Shown one piece after another: positions 6,731 to 26,373 of a DNA stretch of 54,517 nucleotides (position 1 is its first letter; every line of letters begins with the position of its first letter). The notes below the pieces were generated by a model that saw nothing but the letters and a program-made list of their open reading frames with translations, did no database searches and was not told where the DNA came from. The DNA lies in assembly GCA_002269645.1 (NCBI GenBank), contig NIVC01004216.1, forward strand, positions 1 through 54,517, given 5' to 3'. The position numbers and the translations under genes were made by a program. Source of the DNA: Macrostomum lignano. Taxonomy: Eukaryota.

Positions 6731-9700
6731 AGTTATTGGGGCTGCTCAGTTGCTGAGTTATTGGGGCTGCTTAGTTGCTGAGTTATTGGGGCTGCTTAGT
6801 TGCTGAGTTATTGGGCTGCTCAGATGCTGAGTTATTGGGCTGATCAGTTGCTGAGTTATTGGTCTGCTCAGTTGCTGAGTTATTGGGCTGATCAGTTGCT
6901 GAGTTATTGGGCTGATCAGTTGCTGAGTTATTGGTCTGCTCAGTTGCTGAGTTATTGGGGCTGCTCAGTTGCTGAGTTATTGGGGCTGCTCAGTTGCTGA
7001 GTTATTGGGCTGCTCAGTAGCTGAGTTATTGGGGCTGCTCAGTTGCTGATTTATTGGGCTGCTCAGTTGCTGAGTTATTGGGCTGCTCAGTTGCTGGGTT
7101 ATTGGGCTGCTCAGTTGCTGAGTTATTGGGCTCCTCAGTTGCTGAGTTATTGGGCTGCTCAGTTGCTGAGTTGTTGGGGCTGCTCAGTTGCTGAGTTGTT
7201 GGGCTGCTCAGTTGCTGAGTTATTGGGCTGCTCAGTTGCTGAGTTATTGGGCTGCTCAGATTCTGAGTTATTAGGCTGCTCAGTTGCTGAGTTATTGGGC
7301 TGCTCAGTTGCTGAGTTGTTGGGGCTGCTCAGTTGCTGAGTTATTGGGCTGCTCAGTTGCTGAGTTGTTGGGGCTGCTCAGATTCTGAGTTATTGGGCTG
7401 CTCAGATTCTGAGGTATTGGGGCTGCTCAGTTGCTGAGTTATTGGGGCTGCTCAGTTGCTGAGTTATTGGGCTGCTCAGATTCTGAGTTATTAGGCTGCT
7501 CAGTTGCTGAGTTATTGGGCTGCTCAGTTGCTGAGTTGTTGGGGCTGCTCAGTTGCTGAGTTATTGGGCTGCTCAGTTGCTGAGTTGTTGGGGCTGCTCA
7601 GATTCTGAGTTATTGGGCTGCTCAGATTCTGAGGTATTGGGGCTGCTCAGTTGCTGAGTTATTGGGGCTGCTCAGTTGCTGAGTTATTGGGCTACTCAGT
7701 TGTCAGAAGACTCGCAGACTCGCTGAGGTATTAGAATGCTCAGATGCAGATTTGCTGAATTGTTGAGCTTCTGTGACTGAGTTGCTATCCTTTGTTTGTC
7801 TTTCTGATTCCTGTCACCTGATCCCGTCACATGGTCATGGTGACATGACCCCATCTCCAGATCCCTTACCAGATCTCCCCTTATCGCCTCAACCCACAGA
7901 TGTTCATTGCGTTCTTCACCAGCTTATCAATTGCGCACCTCACGACTGGTTTGAGCACCTCATTCTCGCTGCGATCGCTGACCTCGAGAGCTCAGTCGAT
8001 CTGCTCGACACTATTGCACCGTTCGGCCAAGACTTTGAGTCAGGTGAGAGACCAGATCATTGCATCCGAAATAGCCGGTCAAATCACTGAACAAAAGCAG
8101 CGGAAGACACGCCTTTGCCCAAAATGGGTACTCTAAAATGATCACTTTCATTTTAAATGCATTGCCACCCCTTCATCTCAGAGCTCCCGGCGCTTCAGCC
8201 TAAGCTCTACAACACGGTGTCGAGTCCGGAGTTCAAGGAGGCCAAAAAGTCGGTCGTCGACCAATCGAACCGGTGGTTCGATCTCAACGGACTGAAGTTC
8301 GACTCTGACACTTACAAGCTCGAGCGGGTAGCCAATCAGCAGCCTCCATCGGCGTCTGGGTCTCAGCCGTCTGGCAACAACGAGCTCGTCGGCGGGCAGC
8401 TCCGCGACTACCAGTTGGAGTTGGCAGAGCCGGCCCTGTTAGATCGCAACTCGATAGTGATCGCGCCCACTGGCTCTGGGAAGACTCTGGTAGCCGTTCA
8501 TGTCACTCTGCAGCTGCTCAAGGCCGAGCCCCAAGCGAAGGTCAGTGCTGAAAGCAATAAATTTATCATACCACACAACATAATGGCAGTGGGAATAAAA
8601 TGGAGACAGCGGAGTTCACAATTGCCGTCAGCGCTGGTTTACAAGACGATGTCGCCGAATGCTTTGCGCCAGTGCGCCAAGTGCCATGTTTCATGTTAAA
8701 TGTTTGAACATTTGCCCCATTTTCAAACACCATAATATCTTAGGTGGCACTTCTGGCATCCACTAATCAGCTGGTTCAGCAGCAATACGACAAGTTCAGG
8801 TCCGCCCTGCCCTCACCTTGGCGGGACAGAGTTGACCTAATCCTGGGAGGCAAAGACAACAAGAATCGAAAGCCATTCGCCCTGTCTATGAAGAAAAACT
8901 CCATCGTGGTCATTAGCACCCAAATTCTATTAAACGAGCTTGATAGAAAAACAGTTGCGAACATTTCCGATTTCCGCCTCATCATATTCGACGAATGCCA
9001 CAATTGTGCAAAGAGCCACGCCAGTATGAAAGTGATGATGCACTACCTGCGACTGAAGAGAGATCTGGAACAAGAGAATCAATCGGAAAGCTGTCGAGAA
9101 ACCCGCCTGCCACAGATTCTTGGGCTAACGGCCAGTCCAGGTAAAATGCTAGAAAGGCATGAATTATTAAATTCTTGTTTTTAAGCTATTTCACGTCTAA
9201 CGATGCCTGATCTGTTCATTGTGTCTGATCTGTAAGGACACTCAATGTCCATTGTGTCTGATCTGTAAGAACACAACTGTCCATTGTGTCTGATCTGTAA
9301 GAACACAACTGTCCATTGTGTCTGATCTGTAAGGACACTCAATGTCCATTGTATCTGATCTGTAAGGACACTCAATGTCCATTGTGTCTAATCTGTAAGG
9401 ACACTCAATGTCCATTGTGTCTGATCTGTAGGGACACTCAATGTCCATTGTGTCTGATCTGTAAGAACACTACTGCCCATTGTGTCTGATCTGTAAGGAC
9501 ACTCAATGTCCATTGTATCTGATCTGTAAGGACACTCAATGTCCATTGTGTCTGATCTGTAAGGACACTCAATGTCCATTGTATCTGATCTGTAAGGACA
9601 CTCAATGTCCATTGTGTCTGATCTGTAAGGACACTCAATGTCCATTGTGTCTGATCTGTAAGGACACTCAATGTCCATTGTGTCTGATCTGTAAGGACAC

Positions 9701-12700
9701 TCAATGTCCATTGTGTCTAATCTGTAAGGACACTACTGCCCATTGTGTCTGATCTGTAAGGACACTACTGCCCATTGTGTCTGATCTGTAAGGACACTCA
9801 ATGTCCATTGTGTCTGATTTGTAAGGACACTCAATGTCCATTGTGTCTGATCTGTAAGGACACTCAATGTCCATTGTGTCTGATCTGTAAGGACACTCAA
9901 TGTCCATTGTGTCTAATCTGTAAGGACACTACTGCCCATTGTGTCTGATCTGTAAGGACACTACTGCCCATTGTGTCTGATCTGTAAGGACACTCAATGT
10001 CCATTGTATCTGATCTGTAAGGACACTCAATGTCCATTGTGTCTAATCTGTAAGGACACTCAATGTCCATTGTGTCTGATCTGTAAGGACACTCAATGTC
10101 CATTGTGTCTAATCTGTAAGGACACTCAATGTCCATTGTGTCTGATCTGTAGGGACACTACTGTCCATTGTGTCTGATCTGTTAGGACACTCAATGTCCA
10201 TTGTGTCTGATCTGTAAGGACGCTACTGCCAGTGGACAAAAACGCCAATTAAACACCCAAAACATCCAAACGTCCAAAAAACCTGCACCTCAAGGCACCG
10301 GCAAAGCCAAGGGACCAGAGGATGCCAAGGAGCATCTTGTTCAACTGTGCGCCAATCTTGACTGCCCCTACCCTGTCACTGTGCAGCGCTATCTTCAGTC
10401 ACTATTTAAATTTAACTCAGATCAAGACTGTCAAATCCTCTCGGTACCTGCTAAACAGAGCTCGGAAGACGTATTCATTAAATTTTTAAACGAGCTGATG
10501 GACCTTGGGGAGAAGCTGCTATATAGCAATCGGAGCTCGCTGCTAAACTCAGAGCCGGAAGCCCTCCAGATTGCATCAGCGCCGCCAAGAGGCACTCCAA
10601 CTTACACAAACTACTGCTCCGATGTTAAGTACAAAATTCACCAAGTGGCAGACGAAGAGATGGGCAAAGATCTGTTCGCCTGCAGTCGTTATCTGGACAC
10701 ATTCAATCAAGCGTATATGATTGCGCAGTTCTACAATCCCCGAGGTGCGTGGCGCTACATCAAGAAAGAACTTCGAGCTGTGGACGAACTGGCTAAGTCC
10801 CCAGTCTGCGAGGCGGAGAGTCAACTGCGGCAGCGACTGCATAGCCTGATCGGGCCGCTAGAAAGATTCTGCGACACCAAAGAGGCTTCGGTAAGTTTGT
10901 TATTGAGTGCATTTAGCCAAATGCAACGTTCCATTATTTTGATGACTGGTTTATCGCTTGCAGTCGAGTCCTCCGCTGGACAAATTCGTGGAAATCCTTC
11001 GCAACCAGTTCAACTCGCAAGCCGACTCGCGAGCGATTGTTTTCGTACAACGGAAAATCTACGCTCAGGTGATTACTGAGTTCTTAAACGAGCAACTACC
11101 GCATCTACCGGCTGCCTATGTGACTGGCGCAACTTCAAGCGACGCTTCCGGAGGCACTAATGCTTCTGAGCAGCAGGCTCGCATTGAGGGCTTCCGGCAA
11201 GGCGACTACAAAGTGATTGCTTGCACCAGTATGGCGGAAGAAGGCCTAGACATACCGGACTGCAACCTGGTGGTGCGCTACTGTCACGTGACAAACGAAA
11301 TCGCCATGGTGCAGACCAAAGGCCGGTGCCGGGCCAAAAACAGCGCCTATTACGTGATTGTAGCTGAGACACAGGAGGCGCTGCGTCACAAGGAACGCGA
11401 AAATGAGCTGCGCGATGCAATGATGCAGCAATCAGTGGCGTGCGTTACTGATTTAACGACTGAAGAGTTGGTAGTCAAGGTGAGAATCTTTCAGTTTTTT
11501 TGTCGACAGTTTCAATCGCTGTGTTGACTTAAGGACAACTTTGTTTTTCTCTGTGCTGTGCCTCTTCGAGGGTTATAGCCAGGGACTACTATAACATCGA
11601 GATGGGAAACTAGGCAAATCATGGCAAAGTTTTTACGAGGCTGGTTTGCGAGGTTTACGAGGATCTTTGAGTAGTCCCTGGTTTTATAGCCTAGTGAGAG
11701 GGTTTTAGCTTAGTGTTTAGAGTGTCGGACTCATGACTAGAAGGTCGGGTTTTCGATTCTCTACCCACTCGGAACAATTCTTGGAAAAGATACTTCACTC
11801 TAATTTTTTTTCAGTTCACCCAGCTGTAAGATAGGTGCCAGCATTAGCTGGGGTAATTGAGGGTGTGTGGCGATCTCCCAGTCCTTTGACTGAACAGCCG
11901 TACGCAGCCTTCAGATGCGCCGCGCAATAGCTGCGGCTGAGCTGTCGGTTGTACATCTGCTCATTAGGGCAGGTGTAATCAATTATAGACAATTAAAGTT
12001 ATGAATTCTCTTCTCTGATTCTCTTCTTTACGAGTACTTGAGGTTCGGTTCTTGTGCATTATTAATGTTGGGTGTGGCCATAGACGATTCAGTTGCACAC
12101 ACACCCATGCAGCCATGAGCTAAAGAAGCAATGCTTCAAGCTGGGAAAATATACTTTTTTGCGATTGAATTCGTCCAAACTGCAAAACCTTTCGTCCACA
12201 AATGCTTTTTTAATGGGAGCTAAATTTAGATCATACCATAGACAACTGTGTTCACGCAAAAAGGTTCATCCAGTTTGTAAAACATTTCGTCCCCTAGACT
12301 AGAGACGGAGTGTACTGTTCCTACCATAGTTAACACCCAATTGACTGTTCGCTTTTGCTACCACTACAGCTACAGCAACGCATATCTTCCATTCTGAACC
12401 CGGCAAAACAGTCGAAGATGAACCGAGGCCCCTACCATCCAGTGTCAAACGAAGACCGCAGGCGATTAGCCTTGGCTGTTGAAGAAGGCCGCGATTGGAA
12501 ACAACTGGCCGATATCCTTGGGATCAAGAGAAAGACAGCCAAAACTTAGGCTGTCTGACAGGCTTTGTTCAATATCTCGTGATATCAAATAAAGTCGCTC
12601 CGTTTAGCTGTTAGCTGTTTGGACGAAGGGTTTAGACGAAATGTTTTACAAACTGGATGAACCGTTTTGCGTGAACACAGTTGTCTATGGTATAATCTTA

Positions 12701-14149
12701 ATTTAGCTCCCATTAAGAAAGCGTTAGTGGACGAAAGGTTTTGCAGTTTGGACGAATTCAATCGCAAAAAAGTATATAAAAGATATATAAAAGAAGGTTA
12801 CGATAACATGAAATAAGACGCTCGGTTAAGAGAGTAAATACTTAAGAGGTCTTGGCTCACTGTCTTCCGCTAGAGAAGATGTCATAACAATTAAATTTGT
12901 TAAAATTCTTTTAGCCTTCTATAAGCTTTATACGCTACTGCTATAAGCTTTCAATTGCAGATGCTGGATTACCAGGAAAAGGCGCTGAAAGACGAAGAGG
13001 AAAAACGTGCTAATAATAGCACACCTATCGGAAGTGACGTCATCATTGATAGCGACCACGAAATTCTGTGCTGCAAGTGTAAAGAAAAACTGTCGGATTC
13101 GACTCGACTTCGATTGATTTGCGGAATCCATCGCGTCGTCCTGGATGCCGACATGTTTACTGGAGGCCAACGCATTGTTGGTCAACATGGAGGCGAGATC
13201 AAAAAGGTTCCCGGAATGGATATGATTGGTGTGGATTTGCTGTGCGGCTACTGCAGCTACGGACCTGTGGCTAAAATTGCTCGCTACAAAGGCCAATTTT
13301 TCCCTTTGTTGGACCCGGAATGCGTCTGTTTTCGCCGATTGAATGACAAGGTAAGACTTCTATAGTTGGTATTGAAATTCTGTTCATTTAGAACGCAAAT
13401 GAAATAAAATATGTAAATACTGAGCCTGTAAGAACATGTACGGTCATGTCAAGGCTTACGGGGAGAATTGCTGAGATGTCAAGGCTGATGGGGAGAATTG
13501 CTGAGATGTCAAGGCTTACGGGGAGAATTGCTGAGATGTCAAGGCTTACGGGGAGAATTGCTGAGATGTCAAGGCTTACGGGGAGAATTGCTGAGATGTC
13601 AAGGCTTACGGGGAGAATTGCTGAGATGTCAAGGCTTACGGGGAGAATTGCTGAGATGTCAAGGCTTACGGGGAGAATTGCTGAGATGTCAAGGATGAGA
13701 GGTCAGAAGCTACATGTGGTTTATTCAAAAAATGATTCTATTTTTTGTTGCCTTTTTAAAGGGGGCGCTGATTGCTAGCAGTCACTATCGGCCCTAAAAG
13801 ACGGCCTCAGCATTTCAATAATTTACCCCCATATGAGCCTTGACATCCGAGCAATCCCCCATAAGCTATTGACATCTCAGCAATGAAACAATGCAGCAGT
13901 GAAAGTGTAAAAGCCTAACGAATTACCTCGGAAGGAATCGATCATGGCCGGAAGATAATGGATCGCAACACCTTTCCTCATTTACTTTAGAAATTGGAAA
14001 AACAGGTGAGAAAGTGGAAACATACAAAATCCTTCCTTCGCGATGTTGCTGAGCTGAGCAGTGACGATAGAGACTACTGGCGTCGGGCAGTTCCGCGTCT
14101 GCCCAGACAGTACCGAGCTGCGGCAGTTCGAGGCGGAGCGCATCGTTAA
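6005..14149 (+). CDS. RIG-I/MDA5-like receptor (RLR): tandem CARD-like regions, DExD/H (DECH) helicase, C-terminal Zn-binding regulatory domain; 10 exons
   Basis: Exons: 6005-6137, 6235(or 6272)-6391, 6472-6657, 7900-8043, 8182-8540, 8744-9140, 10295-10890, 10964-11479, 12961-13350 and 13991-14149 (TAA). All have GT-AG ends, and phases match from exon 3 onward. Motifs: Q motif LRDYQLE, motif I APTGSGKT, motif II IIFDECH, motif III GLTASPG, EHLVQLCANLD, motif IV AIVFVQRK, motif V TSMAEEGLDIPDCN, motif VI VQTKGRCR, CTD ILCCKC and LLCGYC, terminal VRKWKH. The CARD-like segments are LISLLFQIFKDDIEGLIDIGNIV and LHQLINCAPHDWFEHLILAAI. The exon 2 acceptor is ambiguous (see findings). Confidence 0.9.
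6660..7702. repeat. 24-25 bp minisatellite (gctgctcagttgctgagttattgg) in RLR intron 3
   Basis: About 40 tandem units. Each contains the dyad CTCAG-ttg-CTGAG. Confidence 0.97.
9215..10222. repeat. 33-bp minisatellite (ccattgtgtctgatctgtaaggacactcaatgt) in RLR intron 6
   Basis: About 30 tandem units. It explains the 11-aa periodic ORFs (MDIECPYRSDT, CLICKDTQCPL). Confidence 0.97.
11575..11688. mobile_element. Short MITE-like element
   Basis: Inverted termini tatagccagggactact and agtagtccctggttttata. Confidence 0.5.
11700..11908 (+). mobile_element. tRNA-derived SINE (copy 1)
   Basis: A-box-like tagcttagtgtt, a tRNA-like loop actcatga and B-box-like ttcgattc. The body ttcacccagctgtaa...gccagcattagctggggtaattgagggtgtgtggcga matches the reverse complement of 43748-43949. 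Confidence 0.8.
12152..12774 (+). mobile_element. Tc1/mariner-superfamily internal-deletion derivative with long TIRs and a transposase N-terminal remnant
   Basis: About 140-bp inverted repeats (12152-~12292 and ~12636-12774) starting tacttttttgcgattgaattcgtccaaactgc, flanked by TA on both sides. The interior encodes an HTH-like stub MNRGPYHPVSNEDRRRLALAVEEGRDWKQLADILGIKRKTAKT*. Confidence 0.75.
13445..13695. repeat. 30-bp minisatellite (atgtcaaggcttacggggagaattgctgag) in RLR intron 9
   Basis: About 8 near-identical units, plus about 2 degenerate inverted units at 13836-13883. Confidence 0.95.
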
Positions 14150-14719
14150 TGTGATCAACTATTTTTGTACTTGGTGGGACTGGGTCCTCATTTTTTAAAT
14201 ATTGTGGACATGATGCTACTTTGGTCAGCTACTACTTACAGACTAGTAATATATATTGGTTCATATTGTTCGCAACGTGCTGCATCGGTGAGCAAAATTT
14301 ATCCTCTAAACTGCAACCGTATGGACTGATTCGTCGTATAAATTACTAAACAATGTAACGACCCTAAGAACAAGCACAGAATATTCAGAAACAATTGTTT
14401 AATGATTATATACCTTCTTTATTATGCATGTAATAACCGAAAATATATGTCGTTCATGGATTTACTGCTAAGCCAAATGTTACGGAGGCAGCTGATAACG
14501 AGTCATGTCATGTTACGAACGTATGATATAATATTTTGAAAAATGGGAACTTTGAAAAAACGATGCATTGAAATTGGTTATGAATCTGTATAATTTTAGT
14601 AGTATTAAATAATATAAGTAGATCTGCTATTATTGTCCATTTAAGCAACATACCAGGTAGCAAAGTCTGTAATCAGTTACAGTAAATAATTAAGTCATGC
14701 ACGGCTATTCCAACCCTGT

Positions 14720-15430
14720 CTATAGTCACCAATCAATCATAGAACACCCTGAGCATGTCTACAGTCAGCAATCAATCATAGAACACCCTGAGCATGTCTA
14801 CAGTCACCAATCAGTCATAGAGATCCTTGAGCATGTCTACAGTCACCAATCAGTCATAGAGATCCTTGAGCATGTCTACAGTCACTAATCAGTCATAGAA
14901 CACCCTGAGCATGTCTACAGTCAGAAATCAGTCATAGAGATCCTTGAGCATGTCTACAGTCACCAATCAGTCATAGAACACCTTGAGCATGTCTACAGTC
15001 AGCAATCAATCATAGAACACCTTGAGCATGTCTACAGTCACCAATCAGTCATAGAACACCTTGAGCATGTCTACAGTCACCAATGAATCATAGAACACCT
15101 TGAGCATGTCTATAGTCACCAATGAATCATAGAACACCTTGAGAATGTCTACAGTCACCAATGAATCATAGAACACCTTGAGCATGTCTATAGTCACCAA
15201 TGAATCATAGAACACCTTGAGCATGTCTACAGCCACCAATCAGTCATAGAACACCTTGAGCATGTCTACAGTCAGAAATCAGTCATAGAACACCTTGAGC
15301 ATGTCTACAGCCACCAATCAGTCATAGAGCACCCTGAGCATGTCTACAGCCACCAATCAGTCATAGAACACCTTGAGCATGTCTACAGTCACCAATCAGT
15401 CATAGAACACCTTGAGTATGTCTACAGTCA
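14720..15430. repeat. 39-bp minisatellite (agtcaccaatcagtcatagaacaccttgagcatgtctac) between the convergent RLR and GPCR genes
   Basis: About 18 tandem units. Confidence 0.95.
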
Positions 15431-15517: not shown

Positions 15518-18500
15518 TCAAACTCGCCTCATCAGAAACGGCTCCCTGGCAGCAGACGTCAGCCCGTGGCATCGCTGATCTTGCTCGGGTGACAGCTCCA
15601 CTACAGACAGCCGCTTCATCAGTCTGCTGCTGGTTACCAGGCTCTGCTTCATACTGGCCAGAATTGCTTTTAGGTGTCTACGAAAAGTGGCCTGACTGAT
15701 GAATTGAACAATGGGCCGAGCTGACAGCCAGGTCAGCAGCAGCAGATAGACTACAGAATCTACGGTGAAGAACAGATCCTGAAATCGATTGGTTGGTGAT
15801 TGTTTAGAATCCAAACATTTACTGTAAGATCTGCTGGTTCGACAACTGGGGGAGCCGGTATGAAGAGGCGATAGGAAAGATACTGCGAGAGACAGGAGAG
15901 ACGACAGGGGAGAACATGTAGGCAACTGGAGAGAACAGGGAGATAGGAAGTAAGTGTAGTCCAATAGAAAATGTTGACGCGTTCTCGATATTGAATGCGA
16001 ATATGCGAATGGGAGTGGATCCCTGGTTCAACTGCCGCGGTCACATTCGTTTGGACTTTTGTACACGAGAATTTGCCGGTTTGAATCGTTTTTGTGCGAT
16101 TCAAAACCCATGAAGACCAAACCGCAAGGCACAAGTAGTGTACATGCATAACTATAAGAAATTTGAAAAAAGGTACAGTATGGGAGCGCTTGTGTGTTCT
16201 CAGGAGTCTGCGGAATGGCCAGAATCATCTCAGCGCTGGTTGTGAAAACGATGTCGATGAAGTCGTTGCGCCAGAGTTCCCCACAGCTGTTTTTATTTTT
16301 ATACTACACAGAATCGAATATAGGATGCATCTTTGGTGCCACCCTCCCCCCCCCCACCACAAACCTGTCTGTTCTTCCTATCCAGAAAGCTCGCATGCGA
16401 CTGCGTGCCCAGCAGGGAGCGCAGGCTCTGCGGCACGAAGATGTGCTCCTGCATCATGTGGCTGGCGCTGCTCACAAACTTAGTAAAGGTAAAAATCGAC
16501 GTAGGTGCGTTGAACAGCAGCTCGAGACCGACGGTGATCAGACTGGCTCGGCGAATCTCGACGAAGGCGTCGACATCGATTAACACGACTTGGCCGATGC
16601 TCTCTGGCTGCAGCCACTGGAGCTGCCCAGTTCGGCACAGCTGCAGCAGCCTCAGGCCGCACAGAACCGGCACAACCATTGGCAGAAAGTCGCCAATCAT
16701 CAGATCAATCAGTGGCCAGATCACCGCTTTGTACCGAATCTCAACCCACTTGTCGGAGAAGCCACAGTGGTAGCCTCGGTTGGTTTCGCCCGGATTGTCC
16801 AGCCGGGTCAGGGAGAAAGTCCACAGGAACTGGCAGTTCAAGCTCATCAGTATGGCGCAGAACAGGACGAAGCAGTTGAAAACTCGCTCCCGGTTGTACT
16901 TGGGATAGAACTTGTCCAGCCGCTGGTACAGCAGCAGAGTGTCGATGGCGATCGCCAGGAAGCACAGCTGCCTCATGTGCGCAGCCAGGCTGTACACCAT
17001 CGGGTAGACTTGACAGCAGGTCTCGCAAGCGAACAGCAGCATGAAGTTGACGTCCACCCGGGCAACCGAGCGGAGCCAGAGATCGCCTGCGCTGATCAGG
17101 ATTAGCACCGAGTCCAGGCCGGCCACAGCGCTAGAGAAGTAGCACAGCGGTAGGAAATTGCGACCCATCCTGGTGAGCGTGGCCGCGGCCAACAAATTGC
17201 CCGCTCCTCCTAGAAGAAGAAAAACCGGCAGCAAGAAAGCGATGACCTGACGCCACTTGTCCGGCAGGTCTGGTCGGCCTCGGTAGACGGTGCACTCTGG
17301 CAGCAGCTGACGCTCTTCGCCAGCCGGATGCGCCTCCGACTCGGTGTCCGGGTCGTGCGGCGGCGTCAGTTCTGGCCGGACCGTCTGCGGCATGTTGACA
17401 GTTCCGTTGCCTAGCAACGAGTTGAAGAATTTCCGCTGCAGATCGCCGGATCCTTTCTGAACGTCGATCGCTCCGTAGCCTTCGGAGACTGTTGAAGATA
17501 AAAATCAAGTTGAAGACGTTGAAGTAGTTTTTTTCGATGCACTATAATATTTCAAGCGTCTTGAAATGATGCTTAAGATAGGAAAAAAGGCACACCTGAA
17601 ATAGCAGTAATTCCCTATCACTATCTTGAATAAATATATCATAAGTAATGGTATATTTCACTGGGCTTGGGCTGTGTAAACTCGGAATTTATAGTGTGCA
17701 CAATCCGGGTCTCTTGGCAGATATCTTGTAAACAATATAGATATACGATATCTTTCTCTATAATCCAATCCATCTGTGTAGGCTTGACGAACAGGAACTG
17801 TTCCTTCAAGATTTATGAGCCTATAGAATCATTAAGGCACAAAAATATGGAATGCATAAGTATATGACTAAGAATTCCAGAAGGATTATAATTCTTACGA
17901 CAAAGAGTTCACTTAAGTAGTATAGTAATCTTCGGTTGCTCAATATTTGGCGTCTTTCAATCGCAATGTTCTGTTGCACAACAGTGGCATCTGATCTATA
18001 GTCTATGGCAGTCTTCTGTTGCACAAAATTCGGTATTGTCTATGGCCTACATGGTAATCTTCTGTAGAACAACATGTGGAATTGTCTATGGTCTATGGTC
18101 CTATGGTAATTGTCTGTTGTAGAACATGTTGCATTGTCTATGGTCTATGGTAATTGTCTGTTGTAGAACATCGAACATGTGGCATTATCTATGGTCTATG
18201 GTAAATTGTCTGTTGAACAACATGTGGCATTGTCTATGGTCTAATGTAATTGCCGTTGAACAACATTGGCAATTGACTATTGTGGCAATAGACTATTGTC
18301 TATAGTCGATGGTAATTTTAGGTTGTTTAGCATGTAGCATTGTCTATAGCGGCCTATGGCAATCTACCATTGTTTATATTAGATATCACTTGTCATGACA
18401 TGACCAGATAGCCAGCAATAAAAGTCCAACAGGAAATCTTACAGTCCATATTCTCGAAGAAATCGGCGCCCAGTCCAAGTTTCTTGAGATTTTCTTCAAC

Positions 18501-18860
18501 CTTGGCTCCGCCCTTGAAACTGTTGCTCTTGTCTCCAGCGTGGGTGTCAATCCAGTACAAGCAGGAGTAGCGAGTCATCCTGTTGCTGCAGAACCGGGTC
18601 ACATCGTGATCGAAGCATCCGTGTCGAAGTATTTTAAAGATGCTCACATTGGGAAATTGTCTGGCTCGGCCGTCAATCTCCAGATCCGGCGGGAAATTCG
18701 AGTGCTCCGTGTCCCAGCTGCCCAACTCATTGACAGATCGACGACTAACAACAGTCTCTGCGCTTCTCATCTTCCTCTCGGCTTTCGTTTCTATGGCGAC
18801 GCCGAGCACGATTTGAACCAGCAGCAACAGGCAGCTCCATCTAATCAACAATCGAGGCAT
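15518..18860 (-). CDS. Class A (rhodopsin-like) peptide-type GPCR, ~600 aa, with a predicted signal peptide and extended N-terminal ectodomain; 3 exons
   Basis: Exons are 18860-18443 (418 nt, gtaaga donor, phase 1), 17488-16365 (tttttatcttcaacag acceptor, gtttgt donor, phase 0) and 15778-15518 (tttcag acceptor, stop). Seven hydrophobic segments, TM1 GGAGNLL, TM2 GLDS, conserved Cys before TM3, LAIAIDT at the DRY position, DFLP in TM5, LLFNAP in TM6, and TM7/helix 8 RPIVQFISQATFRRHL. The 7TM core is certain. Joining exon 1 to it rests on phase compatibility only. Confidence 0.8.
17990..18370. repeat. Degenerate tandem repeat built on ttgtctatgg in GPCR intron 1
   Basis: Repeated gtctatgg/gcattgtctatggt motifs with irregular spacing. 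Confidence 0.75.
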
Positions 18861-19694
18861 TAGTCTGATTATTCGACAGGAAAAAAGTATACTATATCTT
18901 CGAAGCGCAGAGAGACAGAGAGAGAGAGAAGAATTGGAGAAATGGAGTTATTAGCAGCTGCACTGTTTGGCTCGCGAGCTTAGCCGAGTAGAGGAAGTCC
19001 ACTGTCAAGAGCTGGAATAATGTTGTCCCAGGGGCAGATTAAATTTTGGACTGGCGGTTGCAGTGAGGGGTTGCTGGTGCGGAGCAGCGCCAGAGAGGGC
19101 TGTTGGTGAAAAAAGGGTCAGCCAGTCAGGGGGGGGGAGCTCAATGGGATTTGCCTGTCCCGCTGCTGGTCGAGTAAAGTATTGGAGGGGGAGGAACTTG
19201 TGTGTCTGAGCTCAGTCGCGCACACACACATACACAGAGAGAGGGAGAGTCACACACTCTCTGTAAAAACCAAGCAAGTATCCAGGGTCATAATTACATT
19301 CCGAGCATAAAACTGGAGGACAAGAGGATAAATTATTAATGAGATTTGCCTATCCGCGAAAATCTGAACTTTCTAAGAAATCTACCAGGTTTAAAATATG
19401 AAACTTGAACGCTTATCAACGTTTCCGAAAAAAGGCAATGAGACATTTAAGTCTCCGGTGTGTCGCTCCCGGCTCCTACGACTAAAGTGAGCTATGAGTG
19501 TTTTAAATCGATTATGTGGCTAAACTGGTAGTCAAGATTCTCTTCTAGCAATAGCTAACTCTGAACTCGCTATTGTTGGCTTTGTTGGACTGCTCGTCTT
19601 ATTTTCATTGTTAAATAGCTATGAAACATATTTAATTCGATTCTAGTTACAAGAAGTGATATTTGTGATCCAGTACTCTGCGAACAGCTTTGGT

Positions 19695-20070
19695 TACCTG
19701 ATGTCTCCCCTGTTGTCTTCCCTGATGTCTCCCCTGTTGTCTCTCCTGTTGTCTCCCCTGTTGTCTCCCCTGTTGTCTTCCCTGATGTCTCCCCTGATGT
19801 CTTCCCTGATGTCTCCCCTGTTGTCTCCCCTGTTGTCTCCCTTGTTGTCTCCCCTGTTGTCTCCCCTGTTGTCTCCCTTGTTGTCTTCCCTGTTGTCTCC
19901 CTTGTTGTCTCCCCTGTTGTCTCCCTTGTTGTCTCCCCTGTTGTATCCCCTGTTGTCTCCCTTGTTGTCTCCCTTGTTGTCTCCCCTGTTGTCTCCCCTG
20001 TTGTCTCCATTGTTGTCTCCCCTGTTGTCTCCCCTGTTGTCATCCCTGTTGTTTCCCCTGTTGTCTCCCC
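19695..20070. repeat. 12-bp minisatellite (ctcccctgttgt)
   Basis: About 30 units. It explains the TTGE/LLSP periodic ORFs. Confidence 0.97.
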
Positions 20071-20679
20071 ATACTCACAAAGATTGCTCAAACACTGCAC
20101 TCTATCTGCTTTGAAATGAGCAATGGCATTTGCTGCAAGCTTAAAGACGGAATGAAGTGAATCCTCTGCAAATACTTACTGTGGATTAACTGTAAGAACT
20201 TCTTTGCCCACAGCACAGTGACAGCTGGTGCAATTCTGATTGGGCCAAGGCCCCCCCACACTTGGTAGCATGTAGGCAATAGACACGCTAGTAGCCAGCC
20301 TGTGTATGAGTCCGTGTGACTGAGCCCCAGGGGTGTCCCGCAGCCTTCCTGCAATTATTATATAATCATAATCATAAATTTGGATCTGATGCTGCCAAAG
20401 AGGCTTCCGGATTGAATTCGAGTCTTGCAATTTCCTGGCTGTGATTTTGAGAAATCTCGGGTCAGTTATTACTGAGAAATAGGGTGAATTGAACTTTGCT
20501 ACAATCTGTTTGTGGGATTTTTGAAGTCAGTGTCTTGTATCGGAAGTAGATGGTGGAAGTGCAGTGGCTGGTCACCTGCAGTTTATAATTACACTGGGAT
20601 CTGGCTAAAATTACTATAATTTACAATGCTATATAGGGAAAAACTTCGCTCTGATACGAGAAGTAGAATAAATTAGAGT

Positions 20680-21372
20680 ACAGTAGAACAGAGTAGAGTA
20701 GTGTAGAGTAGAGTAGAGTAGATTAGATTAGATTAGAGTAGAGTAGAGTAGATTAGATTAGATTAGAGTAGAGTAGTGTAGAGTAGAGTAGAGTAGAGTA
20801 GATTAGAGTAGAGTAGAGTAGAGTAGAATAGAGTAGAGTAGAATAGAATAGAGTAGAATAGAGTAGAGTAGAATAGAGTAGAGTAGAGTAGAGCAGAGCA
20901 GAGTAGAGTAGAGTAGAGTAGAGTAGAGCAGAGTAGAGTAGAGCATAGCAGAGTAGAGTAGAGTAGAGTAGAGCAGAGTAGAGCAGAGCAGAGTAGAATA
21001 GAGTAGAGTAGAGTAGAGTAGAGTTGAGTAGAGTTGAGTAGAGTAGAGTAGAGTAGAGTAGAGTAGAGCAGAGCAGAGTAGAATAGAGTAGAGTAGAATA
21101 GAGTAGAGTAGAGTAGAGTAGAGCAGAGTAGAGTAGAGTAGAGTAGAGTAGAGTAGAGTAGAGTAGAGTAGATTAGATTAGAGTAGAGCAGAGTAGAGCA
21201 GAGTAGAATAGAGTAGAGTAGAGTAGAGTAGAGTAGAGTAGATTAGAGTAGAGCAGAGTAGAGCAGAGTAGAATAGAGTAGAGTAGAGTAGAGTAGAGTA
21301 GAATAGAGTAGAGTAGAGTAGAGTAGAGTAGAGTAGAGTAGAGTAGAGCAGACTAGACTAGACTAGACTAGA
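20680..21372. repeat. (AGAGT)n pentanucleotide microsatellite with AGAAT/AGAGC/AGATT variants
   Basis: Read directly; about 135 units. Confidence 0.98.
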
Positions 21373-22145
21373 GAAGCTAGGAGGGAAGGAGTGGAGAAAA
21401 TATGGATTATATATGTACTACTTGTATCAGTAGAGTATCTCAATAATTGCAAGTATAATTGTTGTGACATTGGAGGTTAAAATTGCTAGTTAAAAATGAA
21501 GTCTAGCTACTCTACCATGCGAGTCCTGGCAGTCTCGCATACCAATGAAACTGTTTACACGAACCATGATTTGAAGTACAGCACAGACCCTTCTAACAAA
21601 TGGGATTGGCAAACTGGGAACAATTTGGGAACAGGGTGGCTTCTCCTCGCCAGCCTGCCCCGGAGCTGTGTGGGGTGAGCTGTGAGAAACCATCCGTGTC
21701 ACCCAGCTAAGTAGCTGAGGAGCATTGAGGACTCGGAGTTGTTCTTAGACTGGTTAATGCATATCAGAGCATGCTTTTAGGCCTACACAGCTTCTTTATC
21801 CTTCTGTCTTATAATTTCATCTAAGCTCATTAATTATTTATTATTTGGGAGGGCCATCATCCCACAGCTATTCCGCAGCTTTCGGACTCAAGTTTTACGA
21901 CTCTTATAGAGTTCATTCATCCTATAAGAGAAGCATTCAGCAGCTTGAGTTGGTATCGATGTTCAACTTTATTGAGCAATAAAAATCAGTAAAGAATTCA
22001 GTTGATAATCTTAAGCCAGTGCAAATATGAATATGAGTAGAAGCAGACAGATACTTATTTATGGCCTTAAGCAATGAAGCATAAGAGGCTGCATAAAATT
22101 GAATTTTAAGATGAAGGAATCTATCACAGCATAGCTGCCGCTAGT

Positions 22146-23184: not shown

Positions 23185-24210
23185 TCATCGTCTTAGTCGA
23201 ATACTGGACGCAACTCGTCCAACTGGTCGGCCACCTGACGCTTCTGGACGTAAAGCCTCGGCGCCCGGCCAGCAGCAATGACAAACTTCGGCCAAAACAA
23301 TGCGAAACTTCTCACTCTGCCGAGTGTAGAGCGGAAACTGCATGCAGCTGGCCAACACCTCGAGCGTCAGCGCCAGCGATCGCAGACCTCTGGACACCGA
23401 CGAGCCATCGTCGACGCAACGTCGAGCGGCAGCGCTGAGAAAGATGGCGGGAGTGAGCAGCACCAGGTGTAGGCTGGACATGTACAACAGCATGCAGGTC
23501 GTGCGTCGGTGTCGACGAACAACCGGCGGACAAGCGGCAGGCTGCAGGAGGGCGCGCTGGATGCCCAGCAAGCCAGCCAGTAGGCGTTCTCGCTGACGAA
23601 ACGAATGCCGCAACACTCGAATGGTGCACGCGTTCAGCACTAGAATGGCCGCTAGCGGTAGGCCTCGCATCGCCGCGTCGGCCGCGCCGAAGACCAGGCT
23701 CACCGACTCTGACCCCTGAACTGTGCAGTTCTGATAGCCTCCCATCAGGGTGTACACCGTGCTCAGCTCAGCCGAGTAGACCGCCGCAGGCAGAACCGAC
23801 GAAGCGACCAAAGCTGCAAAGATGATTCGCCTTCTCGAGCTGACCGCCCCAGCCGGTAGTTGCCGGGGCCGTCTAACCGCGCACAATCTCTCGGCGCTGA
23901 TCACCGACACCGAGAGCAGCGACGCTCGGGCCAGCGAGGGCATTGCCAGTCGACGAGTTGCGACGGCAAGCAAGTTGTTGGACTCATCCGGCCACGACTG
24001 CGTGGCCACTATACAGTGAATCAGAGCCAGCGTCAGGAACAGCAGATCAATGATTGCCAGCGCCAGAATGCACCGGTTGATGAGGTGCGGCAGCATCATT
24101 CGATGGACGGTGATTCGAGCGATCACCGCCGAGCTGACGATACCGACGAGACTGCAAGCCGGGATCAGCACGAACTGGCAGGCGAAATCCAGCTGCTCCA
24201 GGCCTCCCAT
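23185..24210 (-). CDS. Intronless class A peptide-type GPCR, 341 aa
   Basis: Single ATG-to-stop ORF with seven hydrophobic stretches. LAIIDLLFL in TM2, SAERLCAV at the DRY position, GLPLAAILVLN in TM5, LVLLTP in TM6 and CMQFPLYTRQSEKFR in TM7/helix 8. Confidence 0.85.
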   Translation of the reverse strand: MGGLEQLDFACQFVLIPACSLVGIVSSAVIARITVHRMMLPHLINRCILALAIIDLLFLTLALIHCIVATQSWPDESNNLLAVATRRLAMPSLARASLLSVSVISAERLCAVRRPRQLPAGAVSSRRRIIFAALVASSVLPAAVYSAELSTVYTLMGGYQNCTVQGSESVSLVFGAADAAMRGLPLAAILVLNACTIRVLRHSFRQRERLLAGLLGIQRALLQPAACPPVVRRHRRTTCMLLYMSSLHLVLLTPAIFLSAAARRCVDDGSSVSRGLRSLALTLEVLASCMQFPLYTRQSEKFRIVLAEVCHCCWPGAEALRPEASGGRPVGRVASSIRLRR

Positions 24211-25319
24211 GGCGATCGATTCTGGTCTACACGGGGAAGCGGTGAAGCGATAGTGCTTTTATGCTTAAAGCCGCGCCCTGCCACCCCAGTCAGGCTGCAT
24301 CTTCCAGCTTCTTTATGCGGGCTCATTTCTTTGCAATTCAGTCCCTGCCCTTCCCAATGCCTCTCCAGCCATCCATCTATACGCGCGCGCTTTGTTGAGT
24401 ACGCGCGCTTACTTGGATGGAGTACAAGCACGGCAGCTGGAGTGGATGGGAGCTTGAGCCGGTGGAGTATTAGGGAAACTCCCTGCGCGGCGGCATGCAG
24501 ATCCCGCGTGGATGGCTGGGTGGATGCGTGGGGGGGGGGGCGCTACATTTTCTAGTGGGTCGCTGAGGGCTGGCAGTGCGGCGCAGATGACATAGAAACA
24601 ATTGGATACAAAGTGAGTGGTGGGGATTCTGCGTGACGTTGCATCCATATCAAACTAGAGAGGCCGGTAGGGGAGGGGGTAGGCACTGCAACGGAGGTGA
24701 CAAAATTAAAAGTATTATTGATTTCTTTGTCGTGCGATATCGGTTTCAATATTTCTCACAACACAAAATGGGTTGTAATAATTTTAATAACGGCTTCTAT
24801 CTTACCACAGTTAACAGAGTGAGTGCGCAAGAAAGGCTATCCTCTACTTCAGATATTGAGCTGTCGAGCTGTCCTTTCCCATTTCTCAGGCCTTGGACTT
24901 GACTATAGTGGCTTTGCAAGCAAACTCGCAATGCTGAATAGCCAATGAAAAATATTGAGTGCAGAAGCACTGCTACATAATTCAACAGCTCACGCTGAAC
25001 TGTCTATATGGTATAGCGTTACCCCTCTGGCAAACTCTATCATAGGCACATCCAAAGCCATTCTATCAGCTCTTTGGCTATAAAGAGCCATAAATTCTCA
25101 GTTTCCATTCTCAGTTTCCCGCCAAATACCCCCGCCCCGTTCACAACTGTAGGCTTTAGGTTTCGTCCAGTATTGAGTTGTAACATCGATTTCATGGGGC
25201 TGAGTAGGGATTGTGGGTGTTGCAGCTGATATTGGCAATCATGGTAACATTCTTTGCGCTTGGTACCTAGCAAATAATAATGCAAATAAGGGTACTCTAT
25301 ATTCACTCTAGGAGTTTAG

Positions 25320-25795
25320 TTGTGCAGTCAGGAACTCTAGGGTTAGTTATTTAGTCGACTCTAGGGTTAGTTGTGCAGTCAGGAACTCTAGGGTTAGTTA
25401 TTCAGTCGACTCTAGGGTTAGTTATTCAGTCGACTCCAGGGTTAGTAATGCAGTCAGGAACTCTAGGGTTAGTTGTGCAGTCAGGGCCTCTAGGGTTAGT
25501 AATGCAGTCAGGGACTCTAGGGTTAGTAATGCAGTCAGGAACTCTAGGGTTAGTAATGCAGTCAGGAACTCTAGGGTTAGTAATGCAGTCAGGAACTCTA
25601 GGGTTAGTAATGCAGTCAGGGACTCTAGGGTTAGTAATGCAGTCAGGAACTCTAGGGTTAGTTGTGCAGTCAGGAACTCTAGGGTTAGTAATGCAGTCAG
25701 GAACTCTAGGGTTAGTAATGCAGTCAGGAACTCTAGGGTTAGTAATGCAGTCAGGAACTCTAGGGTTAGTAATGCAGTCAAGGACTCTAGGGTTC
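25320..25795. repeat. 27-bp minisatellite (gcagtcaggaactctagggttagtaat)
   Basis: About 17 units, each containing TAGGGTTAG. Confidence 0.96.
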
Positions 25796-26373
25796 AGAAT
25801 GAGGTCAGGATCAGGAGGCAAACATTGCATCTATCGTTGGGCTGAGGGGATACAGCGATGAAAAAAAAACATTGGTCGAATTGTCTTCAGATGAGAGTGA
25901 AAGTTAGTAATCAAAAGTACCGATTGGAATCTTAAAAGCCTTTGAAGAGAGCGAGTGTGTGAACTTGAAGTTAAAGTAGTCAAGTGACCTTTTCTTTCGC
26001 TGATCTGCTTGTAATTCAACACCGACATCGGAAACTGGTTTGAATTTCCAAGTTAAATGAAGAACTGCTTAGAACCAGAATGAATTCATATTTTGTTGAG
26101 TTATAAAAGGAGAAGAAAGGCGAATAATTTTAAGGACACGTTGTCTCTCGGTAACTGTTAAAAAAATTCGTTATGAAGATTATCACCATCAATATTTTTT
26201 TCGTGCTTATTGTCTACTCTGGATTCGGTAATTTTCTTGATTAGAAATATTTTGCTTTAGACTTCTAGATTTACAGTTTTAGATGCATCTGCAGGTGCAT
26301 CATTGAGAAGTGGACTTGGCGGACCCTGTCATGTGCCTGGCAGGTTCCAGAGACCCAAGGAGGCCAAACTAGG

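What the first reader, a model, noticed from the sequence alone, without database searches (positions are those of the whole stretch)
16365..18860. Class A GPCR with a secreted-precursor-like N-terminus: possible tethered or self-released ligand
Seen: ORF 18860-18443 has a signal peptide (MPRLLIRWSCLLLLVQIVLG), basic cleavage-type sites RKMR and SRRS, and three Cys (GCFDHD, FCSN, SCLY). Its gtaaga donor joins the 17488 acceptor in exactly the right phase, giving about 210 residues before TM1. Established: most peptide-type class A GPCRs have short N-termini; RxxR is the furin consensus; PARs and adhesion GPCRs use tethered agonists. Inference: this may be an undescribed receptor type carrying its own prohormone-like or ligand-binding ectodomain.
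Basis: partly seen in the sequence, partly recalled or inferred. Interest (0 to 1): 0.7.

Follow-up and report, generated by a model that had tools for sequence, protein, structure and literature searches.

The report
Flatworm orphan receptor with conserved N-terminal cap
This is one intact three-exon gene of the flatworm Macrostomum lignano for a very divergent rhodopsin-type receptor whose first exon encodes a small cysteine-stapled extracellular module shared by related receptors across flatworms; it is an unstudied orphan receptor, not a hormone precursor fused to a receptor.

Summary
On the minus strand, exon 1 (18860-18443) joins exon 2 (17488-16365) in phase. The window is Macrostomum lignano.

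The seven-helix part matches no Pfam family or solved structure directly. It matches lophotrochozoan class A receptors at E down to 1e-27, and their profile hits TRH, neurotensin and ghrelin receptors at about 1e-25.

The fused layout is real:
- Trematode, cestode, monogenean and Macrostomum orthologues carry the same gapless 35-residue N-terminal motif (N-x-S/T, G-x-F, C-x2-R-x5-C-x2-W) ahead of the seven helices.
- The Fasciola and Schistosoma genes also put it on a separate first exon joined in phase 1.

The RxxR and RR sites are not conserved and lie upstream of the motif, so a released ligand is unsupported. The module most likely forms a disulfide-stapled hairpin cap on the extracellular face; this is inferred. 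A tethered-agonist role is not excluded.

The clade lacks R3.50 and NPxxY. The Fasciola orthologue was catalogued in 2018 as an orphan, with a mispredicted N-terminus. Verdict: new variant of a known kind, moderate interest.

The parts
18443..18860 (-). Exon 1 (418 nt, ends in phase 1): start codon, signal-peptide-like segment, basic stretch, conserved N-terminal module and start of the linker (residues 1-139 plus one base).
   Evidence: GC3 is 0.64. Residues 21-215 hit the N-termini of homologous receptors at E 4e-10 to 7e-5.
18801..18860 (-). Signal-peptide-like segment, residues 1-20 (MPRLLIRWSCLLLLVQIVLG).
   Evidence: Hydropathy peak 2.27. Confident helix in the AF2 model of exon 1. The monogenean orthologue P0025 also has a 20-22-residue hydrophobic leader, while trematode and cestode orthologues start at M-G/V-R-G-G without one. 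No SignalP run was possible.
18735..18776 (-). Basic stretch with RKMR (residues 29-32) and SRRS (residues 39-42).
   Evidence: Present. It aligns with the conserved basic, Gly-rich N-terminus of orthologues, but the R-x-x-R spacing is not conserved.
18552..18650 (-). Conserved N-terminal module, residues 71-103: N71-V-S73 sequon, G81-C82-F83, C91-S-N-R94, Y98, C100, W103.
   Evidence: Gapless in 13 flatworm proteins. G, F, C, R, C and W are invariant; N, S and Y are at least 90% conserved. No Pfam hit. In the full-length AF2 model of orthologue P0025 it forms helix, beta-hairpin, helix at pLDDT 83-93.
17489..18442 (-). Intron 1 (954 nt, GT..AG, phase 1), containing a degenerate 45-52-bp tandem repeat.
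   Evidence: (GC 0.36). The intron after the module exon is also phase 1 in Fasciola hepatica (L001) and Schistosoma rodhaini (L002).
16365..17488 (-). Exon 2 (1124 nt): linker (residues 140-217) and TM1-TM6 (residues about 218-477, 17255-16476). An internal ATG at 17393 (M172) is a possible alternative start.
   Evidence: phmmer against 1.84 billion representatives gave 134 hits, best 1.7e-27. hhalign of the flatworm clade against the Pfam-positive group gave E 1.3e-39. Hydropathy.
15779..16364 (-). Intron 2 (586 nt, GT..AG, phase 0).
   Evidence: The junction is as in database fragment P0001. Its position is not shared with the trematode genes.
15518..15778 (-). Exon 3: TM7 (about residues 516-541), helix 8 (F-R-R-H-L), C-terminal tail and stop codon (15518-15520).
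   Evidence: P0001 is 100% identical across the exon 2/3 junction. The exon 3 ORF matches positions 282-343 of the family HMM (which includes the window protein as 1 of 106 rows) at E 2e-5.

Best explanation
A single three-exon gene of Macrostomum lignano encodes a 600-residue orphan receptor. It is a highly derived class A (peptide-receptor-like, beta-group) GPCR.

It belongs to an orthologous group found across flatworms. The group's hallmark is an N-terminal extracellular module of about 35 residues: a glycosylation sequon, a short helix and a beta-hairpin closed by a C-x8-C disulfide and followed by Trp.

How it most likely works, step by step:
- Shown: the leader and module are encoded in frame with the seven helices, and the module is conserved.
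- Inferred: the hydrophobic leader directs the N-terminus to the outside.
- Inferred: the module stays attached and packs with the ECL2 hairpin as a cap or vestibule over the binding pocket. There it shapes or gates ligand access.
- Inferred: a still-unknown, probably peptide, ligand binds there.

The clade has replaced R3.50 (AIDT instead of D/E-R-Y), W6.48 and NPxxY (window R-P-I-V-Q). Coupling inside the cell is therefore probably non-canonical and cannot be predicted.
For: Organism and gene model:
- P0001, a UniRef M. lignano fragment, is 100% identical over exon 2/3.
- All splice sites are GT..AG, the reading frame is intact, and GC3 is coding-like across exon 1 and the linker.

Fused architecture:
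- The module precedes the seven helices in Cichlidogyrus, Echinostoma, Fasciola, Trichobilharzia, Heterobilharzia, three Schistosoma species, Spirometra, Mesocestoides and two M. lignano paralogues.
- These proteins form one clade in the NJ tree.
- The Fasciola and S. rodhaini genes have the same three-exon layout, with a phase-1 intron after the module exon.

Class A identity:
- Homologues P0002, P0003, P0005 and P0006 pass the Pfam 7tm_1 cut-off.
- hhalign of the clade against that group gives probability 100%, E 1.3e-39.
- The family profile hits TRHR, NTSR1, OX2R and GHSR at about 1e-25.
- The AF2 model of orthologue P0025 (pLDDT 80, pTM 0.80) matches NTSR1, NMUR2, OX1R and TRHR at target-normalised TM-scores of about 0.64-0.75 for receptor-only chains (job, results).
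- N1.50, D2.50, the C3.25-ECL2 cysteine pair, P5.50 and P6.50 are kept.

Cap reading:
- The module is at pLDDT 83-93 in the full-length model but about 40 when exon 1 is modelled alone.
- The N-x-S/T sequon is conserved.
Against: - No transcript evidence for the exon 1/exon 2 junction was available. The exact 600-residue product is not in the 15-billion-protein collection.
The structural inference comes from a 25%-identical orthologue with a shallow alignment over the module.
- I could not read coordinates, so contact between the module and ECL2 or the pocket is inferred, not seen.
- The contrast between the full-length and isolated models compares two different sequences.
- Trematode and cestode orthologues lack the signal peptide, so the leader is not a family constant.
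- No ligand, expression or signalling data exist.
Confidence: 0.6

Rival explanations
1. Tethered agonist or inverse agonist. The conserved hairpin, or the conserved extreme N-terminus, occupies the receptor's own pocket and sets its activity, with or without a trimming protease. It would be a built-in ligand in the manner of PARs, adhesion-GPCR Stachel peptides or self-activated orphan class A receptors.
For: - The module is invariant at six positions and gapless from Macrostomorpha to Neodermata.
- It is confidently modelled only in the context of the whole receptor.
- The distance from Met1 to the first module cysteine is fixed at 48 residues in all trematode and cestode orthologues. It is 48 plus a 22-residue leader in the monogenean.
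- The classic activation microswitches R3.50, W6.48 and NPxxY are lost.
- No ligand is known.
Against: - The RxxR sites of the window protein are not conserved.
- No coordinates were available to show insertion into the pocket.
- Conservation equally fits a ligand-binding cap.
- Loss of microswitches is shared with the wider annelid and nemertean family, which lacks this module.
Confidence: 0.2
2. Two separate genes. Exon 1 would be a small secreted protein (155-residue read-through ORF 18860-18393), and the receptor would start at ATG 17393 with a short 46-residue N-terminus.
For: - The exon 1 ORF reads 16 codons into the intron and stops.
- An in-frame ATG exists at 17393.
- There is no transcript evidence for the junction, and neither product is in the protein collection.
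Against: - The same module sits on the same polypeptide as the seven helices in independent annotations of more than ten species.
- The two trematode genes examined use a phase-1 intron at the same place in the architecture.
- Donor and acceptor are strong and in frame.
- The 95 nt between 17488 and 17393 have coding-like GC3 of 0.69.
- The exon 1 model alone is disordered.
Confidence: 0.07
3. Prohormone-receptor fusion. Furin-type cleavage at RKMR and/or SRRS would release a peptide that acts as a diffusible ligand.
For: A signal-peptide-like leader is followed by R-K-M-R and R-R within 42 residues.
Against: - The sites are absent from all orthologues, including the two M. lignano paralogues.
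- The released pieces (about residues 21-32 and 33-41) are the least conserved part of the N-terminus in the window protein.
- There is no Gly-basic amidation signal and no repeated peptides.
- The conserved module would remain on the receptor.
Confidence: 0.04
4. Decaying or non-functional receptor copy in a recently duplicated genome, with the motif losses reflecting loss of function.
For: - R3.50, W6.48 and N7.49/Y7.53 are absent.
- There is no Pfam hit.
- The M. lignano paralogue models P0007 and P0059 are incomplete.
Against: - The 600-codon frame is intact across three exons, with high GC3.
- The same substitutions are fixed across the clade. Orthologues were found in every trematode and cestode species recovered, and these are lineages with reduced GPCR sets (PMC11886862). 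That pattern argues for selection.
Confidence: 0.05

Closest known systems
Flatworm orphan 'rhodopsin' receptors catalogued in genome inventories: Fasciola hepatica D915_06590, clade 'Peptide-6', in McVeigh et al. 2018 (PMC6114109). Related concepts are fwRhod and PROF1/Srfb (Zamanian et al. 2011, PMC3261222).
   Same: D915_06590 covers the same Fasciola gene as orthologue P0155 (identical sequence from the linker onward). Its listed motifs are IATLD / DTL / RPYVH, against window AGLD / DTL / RPIVQ. It has no InterPro domain and no non-flatworm BLAST hit. It is an orphan.
   Different: - The published model has a wrong first exon and lacks the N-terminal module. It is not in the final fwRhod list.
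- PROF1 genes are described as intronless, with D-[R/K]-[C/M] in TM3 and [N/S]-[F/G]-x-x-[Y/F] in TM7. This gene has two introns, D-T-L and R-P-x-x-Q.
Beta-group peptide class A GPCRs: TRH receptor, neurotensin receptor 1, ghrelin/GHSR, neuromedin U and orexin receptors.
   Same: These are the best sequence-profile matches (E about 1e-25) and the best fold matches (target-normalised TM-scores of about 0.64-0.75 for receptor-only chains). Shared features are N1.50, D2.50, the C3.25-ECL2 disulfide pair, P5.50, P6.50, an ECL2 hairpin and a helix 8 F-R motif.
   Different: - Only 11-14% identity in the fold alignments.
- R3.50, W6.48 and N7.49/Y7.53 are replaced.
- The N-terminus is about 217 residues long and carries a conserved module those receptors lack.
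Protease-activated receptors and adhesion GPCRs (tethered agonists).
   Same: A class of GPCR whose own N-terminal sequence can act on the seven-helix bundle. A signal peptide and basic residues sit near the N-terminus.
   Different: No conserved protease site precedes a conserved agonist sequence, and no GAIN/GPS or other Pfam domain is present. The resemblance is only an idea and was not demonstrated.
Class A receptors whose N-terminus forms a structured lid over the pocket, such as the N-terminal hairpin stacked on ECL2 in rhodopsin and the N-terminal caps of lipid receptors (from general knowledge, not tested here).
   Same: The predicted N-terminal beta-hairpin plus ECL2 hairpin in the orthologue model.
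   Different: There is no sequence relationship. Here the hairpin is disulfide-stapled, about 115 residues upstream of TM1 in the window protein, and restricted to flatworms.

Membership tests
Class A (rhodopsin-like) GPCR superfamily | Seven transmembrane helices with the N-terminus outside. | tested here: met
   Seven hydrophobic segments follow the leader. Basic residues cluster in ICL1, ICL2, ICL3 and the tail (read from the sequence). The AF2 model of orthologue P0025 shows seven long helices plus helix 8.
Class A (rhodopsin-like) GPCR superfamily | A significant match to Pfam 7tm_1 or to a solved class A receptor. | tested here: inconclusive
   The direct searches fail: no Pfam hit, no PDB hit, and the clade profile finds nothing in PDB. 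The indirect chain succeeds: exon 2 matches P0002 at E 1.7e-27, P0002 scores 40.6 bits on 7tm_1 against a cut-off of 30.5, hhalign gives E 1.3e-39, and the family profile hits TRHR at E 2.5e-25.
Class A (rhodopsin-like) GPCR superfamily | Conserved microswitches: N1.50, D2.50, D/E-R-Y, CWxP, NPxxY. | tested here: not met
   N1.50 (GAGNLL), D2.50 (AGLD), D3.49, P5.50, P6.50 and P7.50 are present. R3.50 is T, W6.48 is N, N7.49 is R and Y7.53 is Q. The mapping uses the TRHR alignment.
Class A (rhodopsin-like) GPCR superfamily | A TM3 (3.25) to ECL2 disulfide pair. | tested here: met
   The C in E-T-C-C-Q and the C in Y-H-C-G-F are nearly invariant in the 93-sequence alignment.
Flatworm N-module receptor orthogroup (defined here) | A gapless N-x-[ST]-x-[FL]-x2-[LVI]-x2-G-x-F-x7-C-x2-R-x3-[YF]-x-C-x2-W motif upstream of TM1. 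| tested here: met
   Window residues 71-103, alignments A3 and A4.
Flatworm N-module receptor orthogroup (defined here) | The module is encoded on its own first exon and joined in phase 1 to the exon carrying TM1-TM6. | tested here: met
   Seen in the window, in Fasciola hepatica L001 and in Schistosoma rodhaini L002.
PROF1 (platyhelminth rhodopsin-like orphan family 1) | Intronless genes, TM3 D-[R/K]-[C/M/L/V], TM7 [N/S/D]-[F/G/I]-x-x-[Y/F/M/L] (PMC3261222). | tested here: not met
   This gene has two introns, TM3 D-T-L and TM7 R-P-I-V-Q.
Protease-activated / tethered-agonist receptors | A conserved protease cleavage site immediately N-terminal to a conserved agonist sequence. | tested here: not met
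   RKMR and SRRS are not conserved in orthologues or paralogues. Whether the module acts on the pocket could not be tested.
Adhesion GPCR | A GAIN/GPS autoproteolytic domain and class B-type seven helices. | tested here: not met
   No Pfam domain in the N-terminus. The seven helices match class A.
Neuropeptide or prohormone precursor | A signal peptide followed by conserved peptides flanked by dibasic sites, often with Gly for amidation. | tested here: not met
   Only a signal-like leader is present. The basic sites are not conserved, there is no G-[KR]-[KR], and the conserved part is a Cys hairpin that stays on the receptor.

The most novel reading that the evidence does not exclude
The disulfide-stapled N-terminal hairpin is a built-in tethered agonist or gate of a class A receptor lineage that has dispensed with the R3.50 and NPxxY switches. 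The lineage is conserved from free-living Macrostomum to flukes and tapeworms. That would make it a flatworm-specific self-regulated receptor type with its own activation logic.
Probability: 0.15. Interest if true: 0.65.

Novelty: new variant of a known kind. Interest (0 to 1): 0.4.

Why it matters
- If the module is functionally required, this is a phylum-wide receptor with an N-terminal element that matches nothing in Pfam or the PDB and that standard annotation has missed. In Fasciola and Schistosoma the first exon lies 29-37 kb upstream, and the published Fasciola model replaced it with a spurious exon.
- Receptors restricted to flatworms and unlike host receptors are of interest as selective anthelmintic targets. 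That argument is made in PMC6114109.
- Macrostomum lignano is a tractable laboratory model in which the function of the orthologue could be studied.
- Practically, the finding corrects the gene model to three exons and 600 residues. The public M. lignano entry is only a 150-residue fragment, auto-named 'ABC transmembrane type-1 domain-containing protein'.

Tried and rejected
- The word-indexed protein search with the spliced protein and with the clade alignment found nothing. It even missed the identical fragment P0001, probably because low-complexity Leu-rich words filled the candidate list. The exhaustive phmmer search was needed.
The window protein was therefore never modelled whole.
- Its exact sequence, the ATG-17393 product and the exon 1 read-through product are all absent from the collection.

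TM7:
- I first looked for it just after 16365. The acceptor at 16287/16286 gives an 18-codon tail, and another frame has a weak 'ALPYC' motif. I rejected both once P0001 showed the real exon 3 at 15778.

Neighbouring ORF:
- I tested whether the class A-like ORF at 23185-24210 is a paralogue. BLASTP gives E above 1 and the family HMM only E 2e-4, so it is not the same family.

N-module comparisons:
- The module profile against PDB gives only a weak look-alike to antibody VH FR3-CDR3-FR4 (E 0.01-0.08). I regard this as chance or convergence.
- The module is absent from the annelid and nemertean relatives. The only hit was a weak one in a Lineus isoform (E 0.005).

Introns and literature:
- The intron 2 position is not conserved with the trematode genes.
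- Searches for the Fasciola locus tag and for tethered flatworm GPCRs found nothing relevant.
Full report
**What is in the sequence**

On the minus strand an ATG at 18860 opens a 418-nt exon. Its first 20 codons are signal-peptide-like (MPRLLIRWSCLLLLVQIVLG). They are followed by RKMR (residues 29-32), SRRS (39-42) and cysteines at positions 82, 91 and 100.

The exon ends in phase 1 at ACT|GTAAGA (18443/18442). The acceptor TTTTTATCTTCAACAG|TC (17489/17488) continues the frame into the long ORF, reading ...FFENMD-F-SEGYG.... TM1 starts near residue 218.

An exhaustive phmmer search returned a 150-residue database fragment, P0001, that is 100% identical to the end of exon 2. It then continues DLFFTVDSVVYLLL...FLMRRV. 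That continuation is a third exon at 15778-15518, behind the acceptor GATTTCAG|GAT, and it encodes TM7 and helix 8.

The full coding sequence is 1803 nt, or 600 residues. GC3 is 0.64 in exon 1, 0.69 in the linker, 0.78 in the rest of exon 2 and 0.60 in exon 3. Overall GC in intron 1 is 0.36.

**Organism**

P0001 is UniRef A0A1I8G0Y4 of Macrostomum lignano, a free-living flatworm. The neighbouring genes fit a metazoan genome: a RIG-I-like helicase, a sulfotransferase-like ORF and many minisatellites.

**Is it a class A GPCR?**

Not by direct search:
- Pfam gives nothing for the spliced protein or for exon 2.
- PDB phmmer gives nothing.
- A profile of the flatworm clade alone finds no receptor in the PDB.

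The indirect chain is strong:
- Exon 2 finds 134 proteins at E no greater than 1e-3 among 1.84 billion representatives, with non-self hits down to 1.7e-27.
- Several of these, from the annelids Owenia and Capitella and from unnamed assemblies, pass the curated 7tm_1 cut-off.
- hhalign of the flatworm clade against that group gives probability 100% and E 1.3e-39 over TM1 to helix 8.
- The 93-sequence family profile hits TRH receptor, neurotensin receptor 1, orexin-2 and ghrelin receptors at about 1e-25.
- An AlphaFold2 model of the monogenean orthologue P0025 (mean pLDDT 80, pTM 0.80) matches NTSR1, NMUR2, OX1R and TRHR at target-normalised TM-scores of about 0.64-0.75 for receptor-only chains.

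The TRHR alignment and the clade alignment let the motifs be mapped.
- Kept: N1.50, D2.50, D3.49, the C3.25-ECL2 cysteine pair, P5.50, P6.50 and P7.50.
- Replaced in the window protein: R3.50 is Thr (AIDT), W6.48 is Asn, and NPxxY reads R-P-I-V-Q.

Loss of R3.50 and a basic residue at 7.49 are shared with the wider lophotrochozoan family, whose consensus is E-G/T-F and K-F-F-x-Y.

**Is the N-terminal exon part of the receptor?**

Three independent lines say yes.

1. Residues 21-215 of the window protein, searched on their own, hit the N-termini of nine homologous receptors at E 4e-10 to 7e-5.
2. Thirteen flatworm proteins carry, ahead of TM1 and without a single gap, the motif N-x-[ST]-x-[FL]-x2-[LVI]-x2-G-x-F-x7-C-x2-R-x3-[YF]-x-C-x2-W. 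G, F, C, R, C and W are invariant. The species are Cichlidogyrus, Echinostoma, Fasciola, Trichobilharzia, Heterobilharzia, three Schistosoma species, Spirometra, Mesocestoides and two M. lignano paralogues. In a neighbour-joining tree of the seven-helix region these proteins and their N-terminally truncated gene models form one clade with the window protein.
3. Gene structure agrees. In Fasciola hepatica (L001) and Schistosoma rodhaini (L002) the module is also on its own first exon. It is joined in phase 1, across introns of about 29 and 37 kb, to the exon that carries the linker and TM1-TM6. A third exon carries TM7. Intron 2 differs in position and phase from the window gene.

No transcript evidence was available. 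The exact 600-residue product is not in the protein collection.

**What the N-terminus is not**

- RKMR and SRRS are not conserved. Orthologues have M-G/V-R-G-G-x-R-x-K at the aligned place and the M. lignano paralogues have R-I-R-F-R. Neither is R-x-x-R.
- Both window sites lie upstream of the conserved module. Cleavage would only trim the N-terminus.
- There are no repeated dibasic-flanked peptides and no Gly-basic amidation sites.
- No Pfam domain is found in any family member.

A prohormone-like or self-released ligand is therefore not supported.

**What it most likely is**

In the full-length model of P0025 the module is confident (pLDDT 83-93). It forms a short helix, a beta-hairpin whose loop is bracketed by the two invariant cysteines, and a second helix. 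A second hairpin precedes TM1, and ECL2 also forms a hairpin.

Exon 1 of the window protein modelled alone is disordered apart from the leader helix, with pLDDT about 40-48.

Together with the conserved N-glycosylation sequon, this points to a small disulfide-stapled element that is structured only in the context of the receptor's extracellular face. In other words, it looks like a cap or vestibule.

Caveats:
- The two models are of different sequences.
- The alignment over the module is shallow.
- I could not inspect coordinates, so contact with the pocket is inferred.
- A tethered agonist or gate role is not excluded. It is made somewhat attractive by the fixed 48-residue distance from Met1 to the first module cysteine in all trematode and cestode orthologues and by the lost microswitches.

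**Signal peptide**

The window protein and the monogenean orthologue have a hydrophobic leader. Trematode and cestode orthologues, and paralogue P0059, begin at the conserved M-G/V-R-G-G. The leader is therefore lineage-variable, and the module is the constant feature.

**Comparison with the literature**

- The Fasciola orthologue is D915_06590 in McVeigh et al. 2018 (PMC6114109). It is listed in clade 'Peptide-6' with no predicted domain, no non-flatworm BLAST hit and the motifs IATLD / DTL / RPYVH. Its first exon is spurious, so the module is missing, and it is not in the final fwRhod list.
- PROF1 receptors (PMC3261222) are intronless and keep D-R/K. This gene does not fit them.
- I found no paper describing the module.

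**Verdict**

The fused gene model is well supported. The receptor is a divergent orphan class A GPCR of a flatworm-wide orthogroup. The 'secreted precursor' reading is rejected. The role of the conserved N-terminal hairpin, as cap or as tethered modulator, is open.

Novelty: new variant of a known kind. Interest is moderate.

Noticed in passing
window 8157-13365 (+): A multi-exon RIG-I-like receptor gene. The ORF pieces match DEAD/ResIII, Helicase_C, RIG-I_C and RIG-I_C-RD.
   Followed up: partly
window 23185-24210 (-): A second, single-ORF, 341-residue class A-like receptor. Its 7tm_1 match is E 5.6e-5 at 23.2 bits, below the cut-off, and it has an E-R-L motif. It is not in the same family as the finding (BLASTP E above 1, family HMM E 2e-4). 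The exact sequence is not in the protein collection.
   Followed up: partly
window 1-963 and 5773-6737: A large inverted repeat: arms 1-433 / 6305-6737 and 525-963 / 5773-6211, 98-99% complementary, flanking about 4.8 kb. Each arm carries a 142-151-residue ORF (72-500 minus strand, 6211-6666 plus strand). It could be a transposon or a palindromic duplication.
   Followed up: no
window 14717-15430: A 39-bp minisatellite of 18 copies at 92% match begins about 90 nt downstream of the receptor's stop codon. No AATAAA or ATTAAA lies within the roughly 420 nt after the stop.
   Followed up: no
window 17980-18283 (inside intron 1): A degenerate tandem repeat with a 45-52-bp unit (96-bp higher-order unit), 73-81% match.
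   Followed up: no
window 13446-13694; 19697-20070; 20662-21373; 25305-25810; 38393-39838; 43978-44418: The window is unusually rich in mini- and microsatellites: a 30-mer x8, a 12-mer x31, the pentamer AGTAG x142 and a 27-mer x19. Long repeat-derived ORFs such as SLIKLSQ... create spurious reading frames on both strands.
   Followed up: no
window 18861-18885 (-): A pyrimidine tract plus CAG (TTTTTTCCTGTCGAATAATCAG) ends 5 nt upstream of the start ATG. It looks like a splice acceptor and could be a spliced-leader trans-splice site or the acceptor of a 5'-UTR intron. This was not tested.
   Followed up: no
window 42991-43422 (+) and 48162-50084 (+): A sulfotransferase-like ORF (Sulfotransfer_5, E 4.6e-4, below the cut-off), and a 640-residue Ser/Gln-rich ORF with N-terminal CxxC pairs and no family match.
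   Followed up: no
L001 3001-39155 (Fasciola hepatica); L002 1001-42306 (Schistosoma rodhaini): In the trematode orthologues the module-encoding first exon lies about 29 and 37 kb upstream of exon 2. This explains why several deposited models (P0023, P0037, P0047, P0151 and D915_06590) lack or mispredict the N-terminus.
   Followed up: yes
alignment A4 (module residues 63-111 of the window protein): The module profile weakly resembles the FR3-CDR3-FR4 stretch of antibody heavy chains (L-N-S-L-x-F-E-D-x-x-x-Y-Y-C-A...Y-W; E 0.01 and 0.08). This is probably convergence on a strand-loop-strand pattern.
   Followed up: partly
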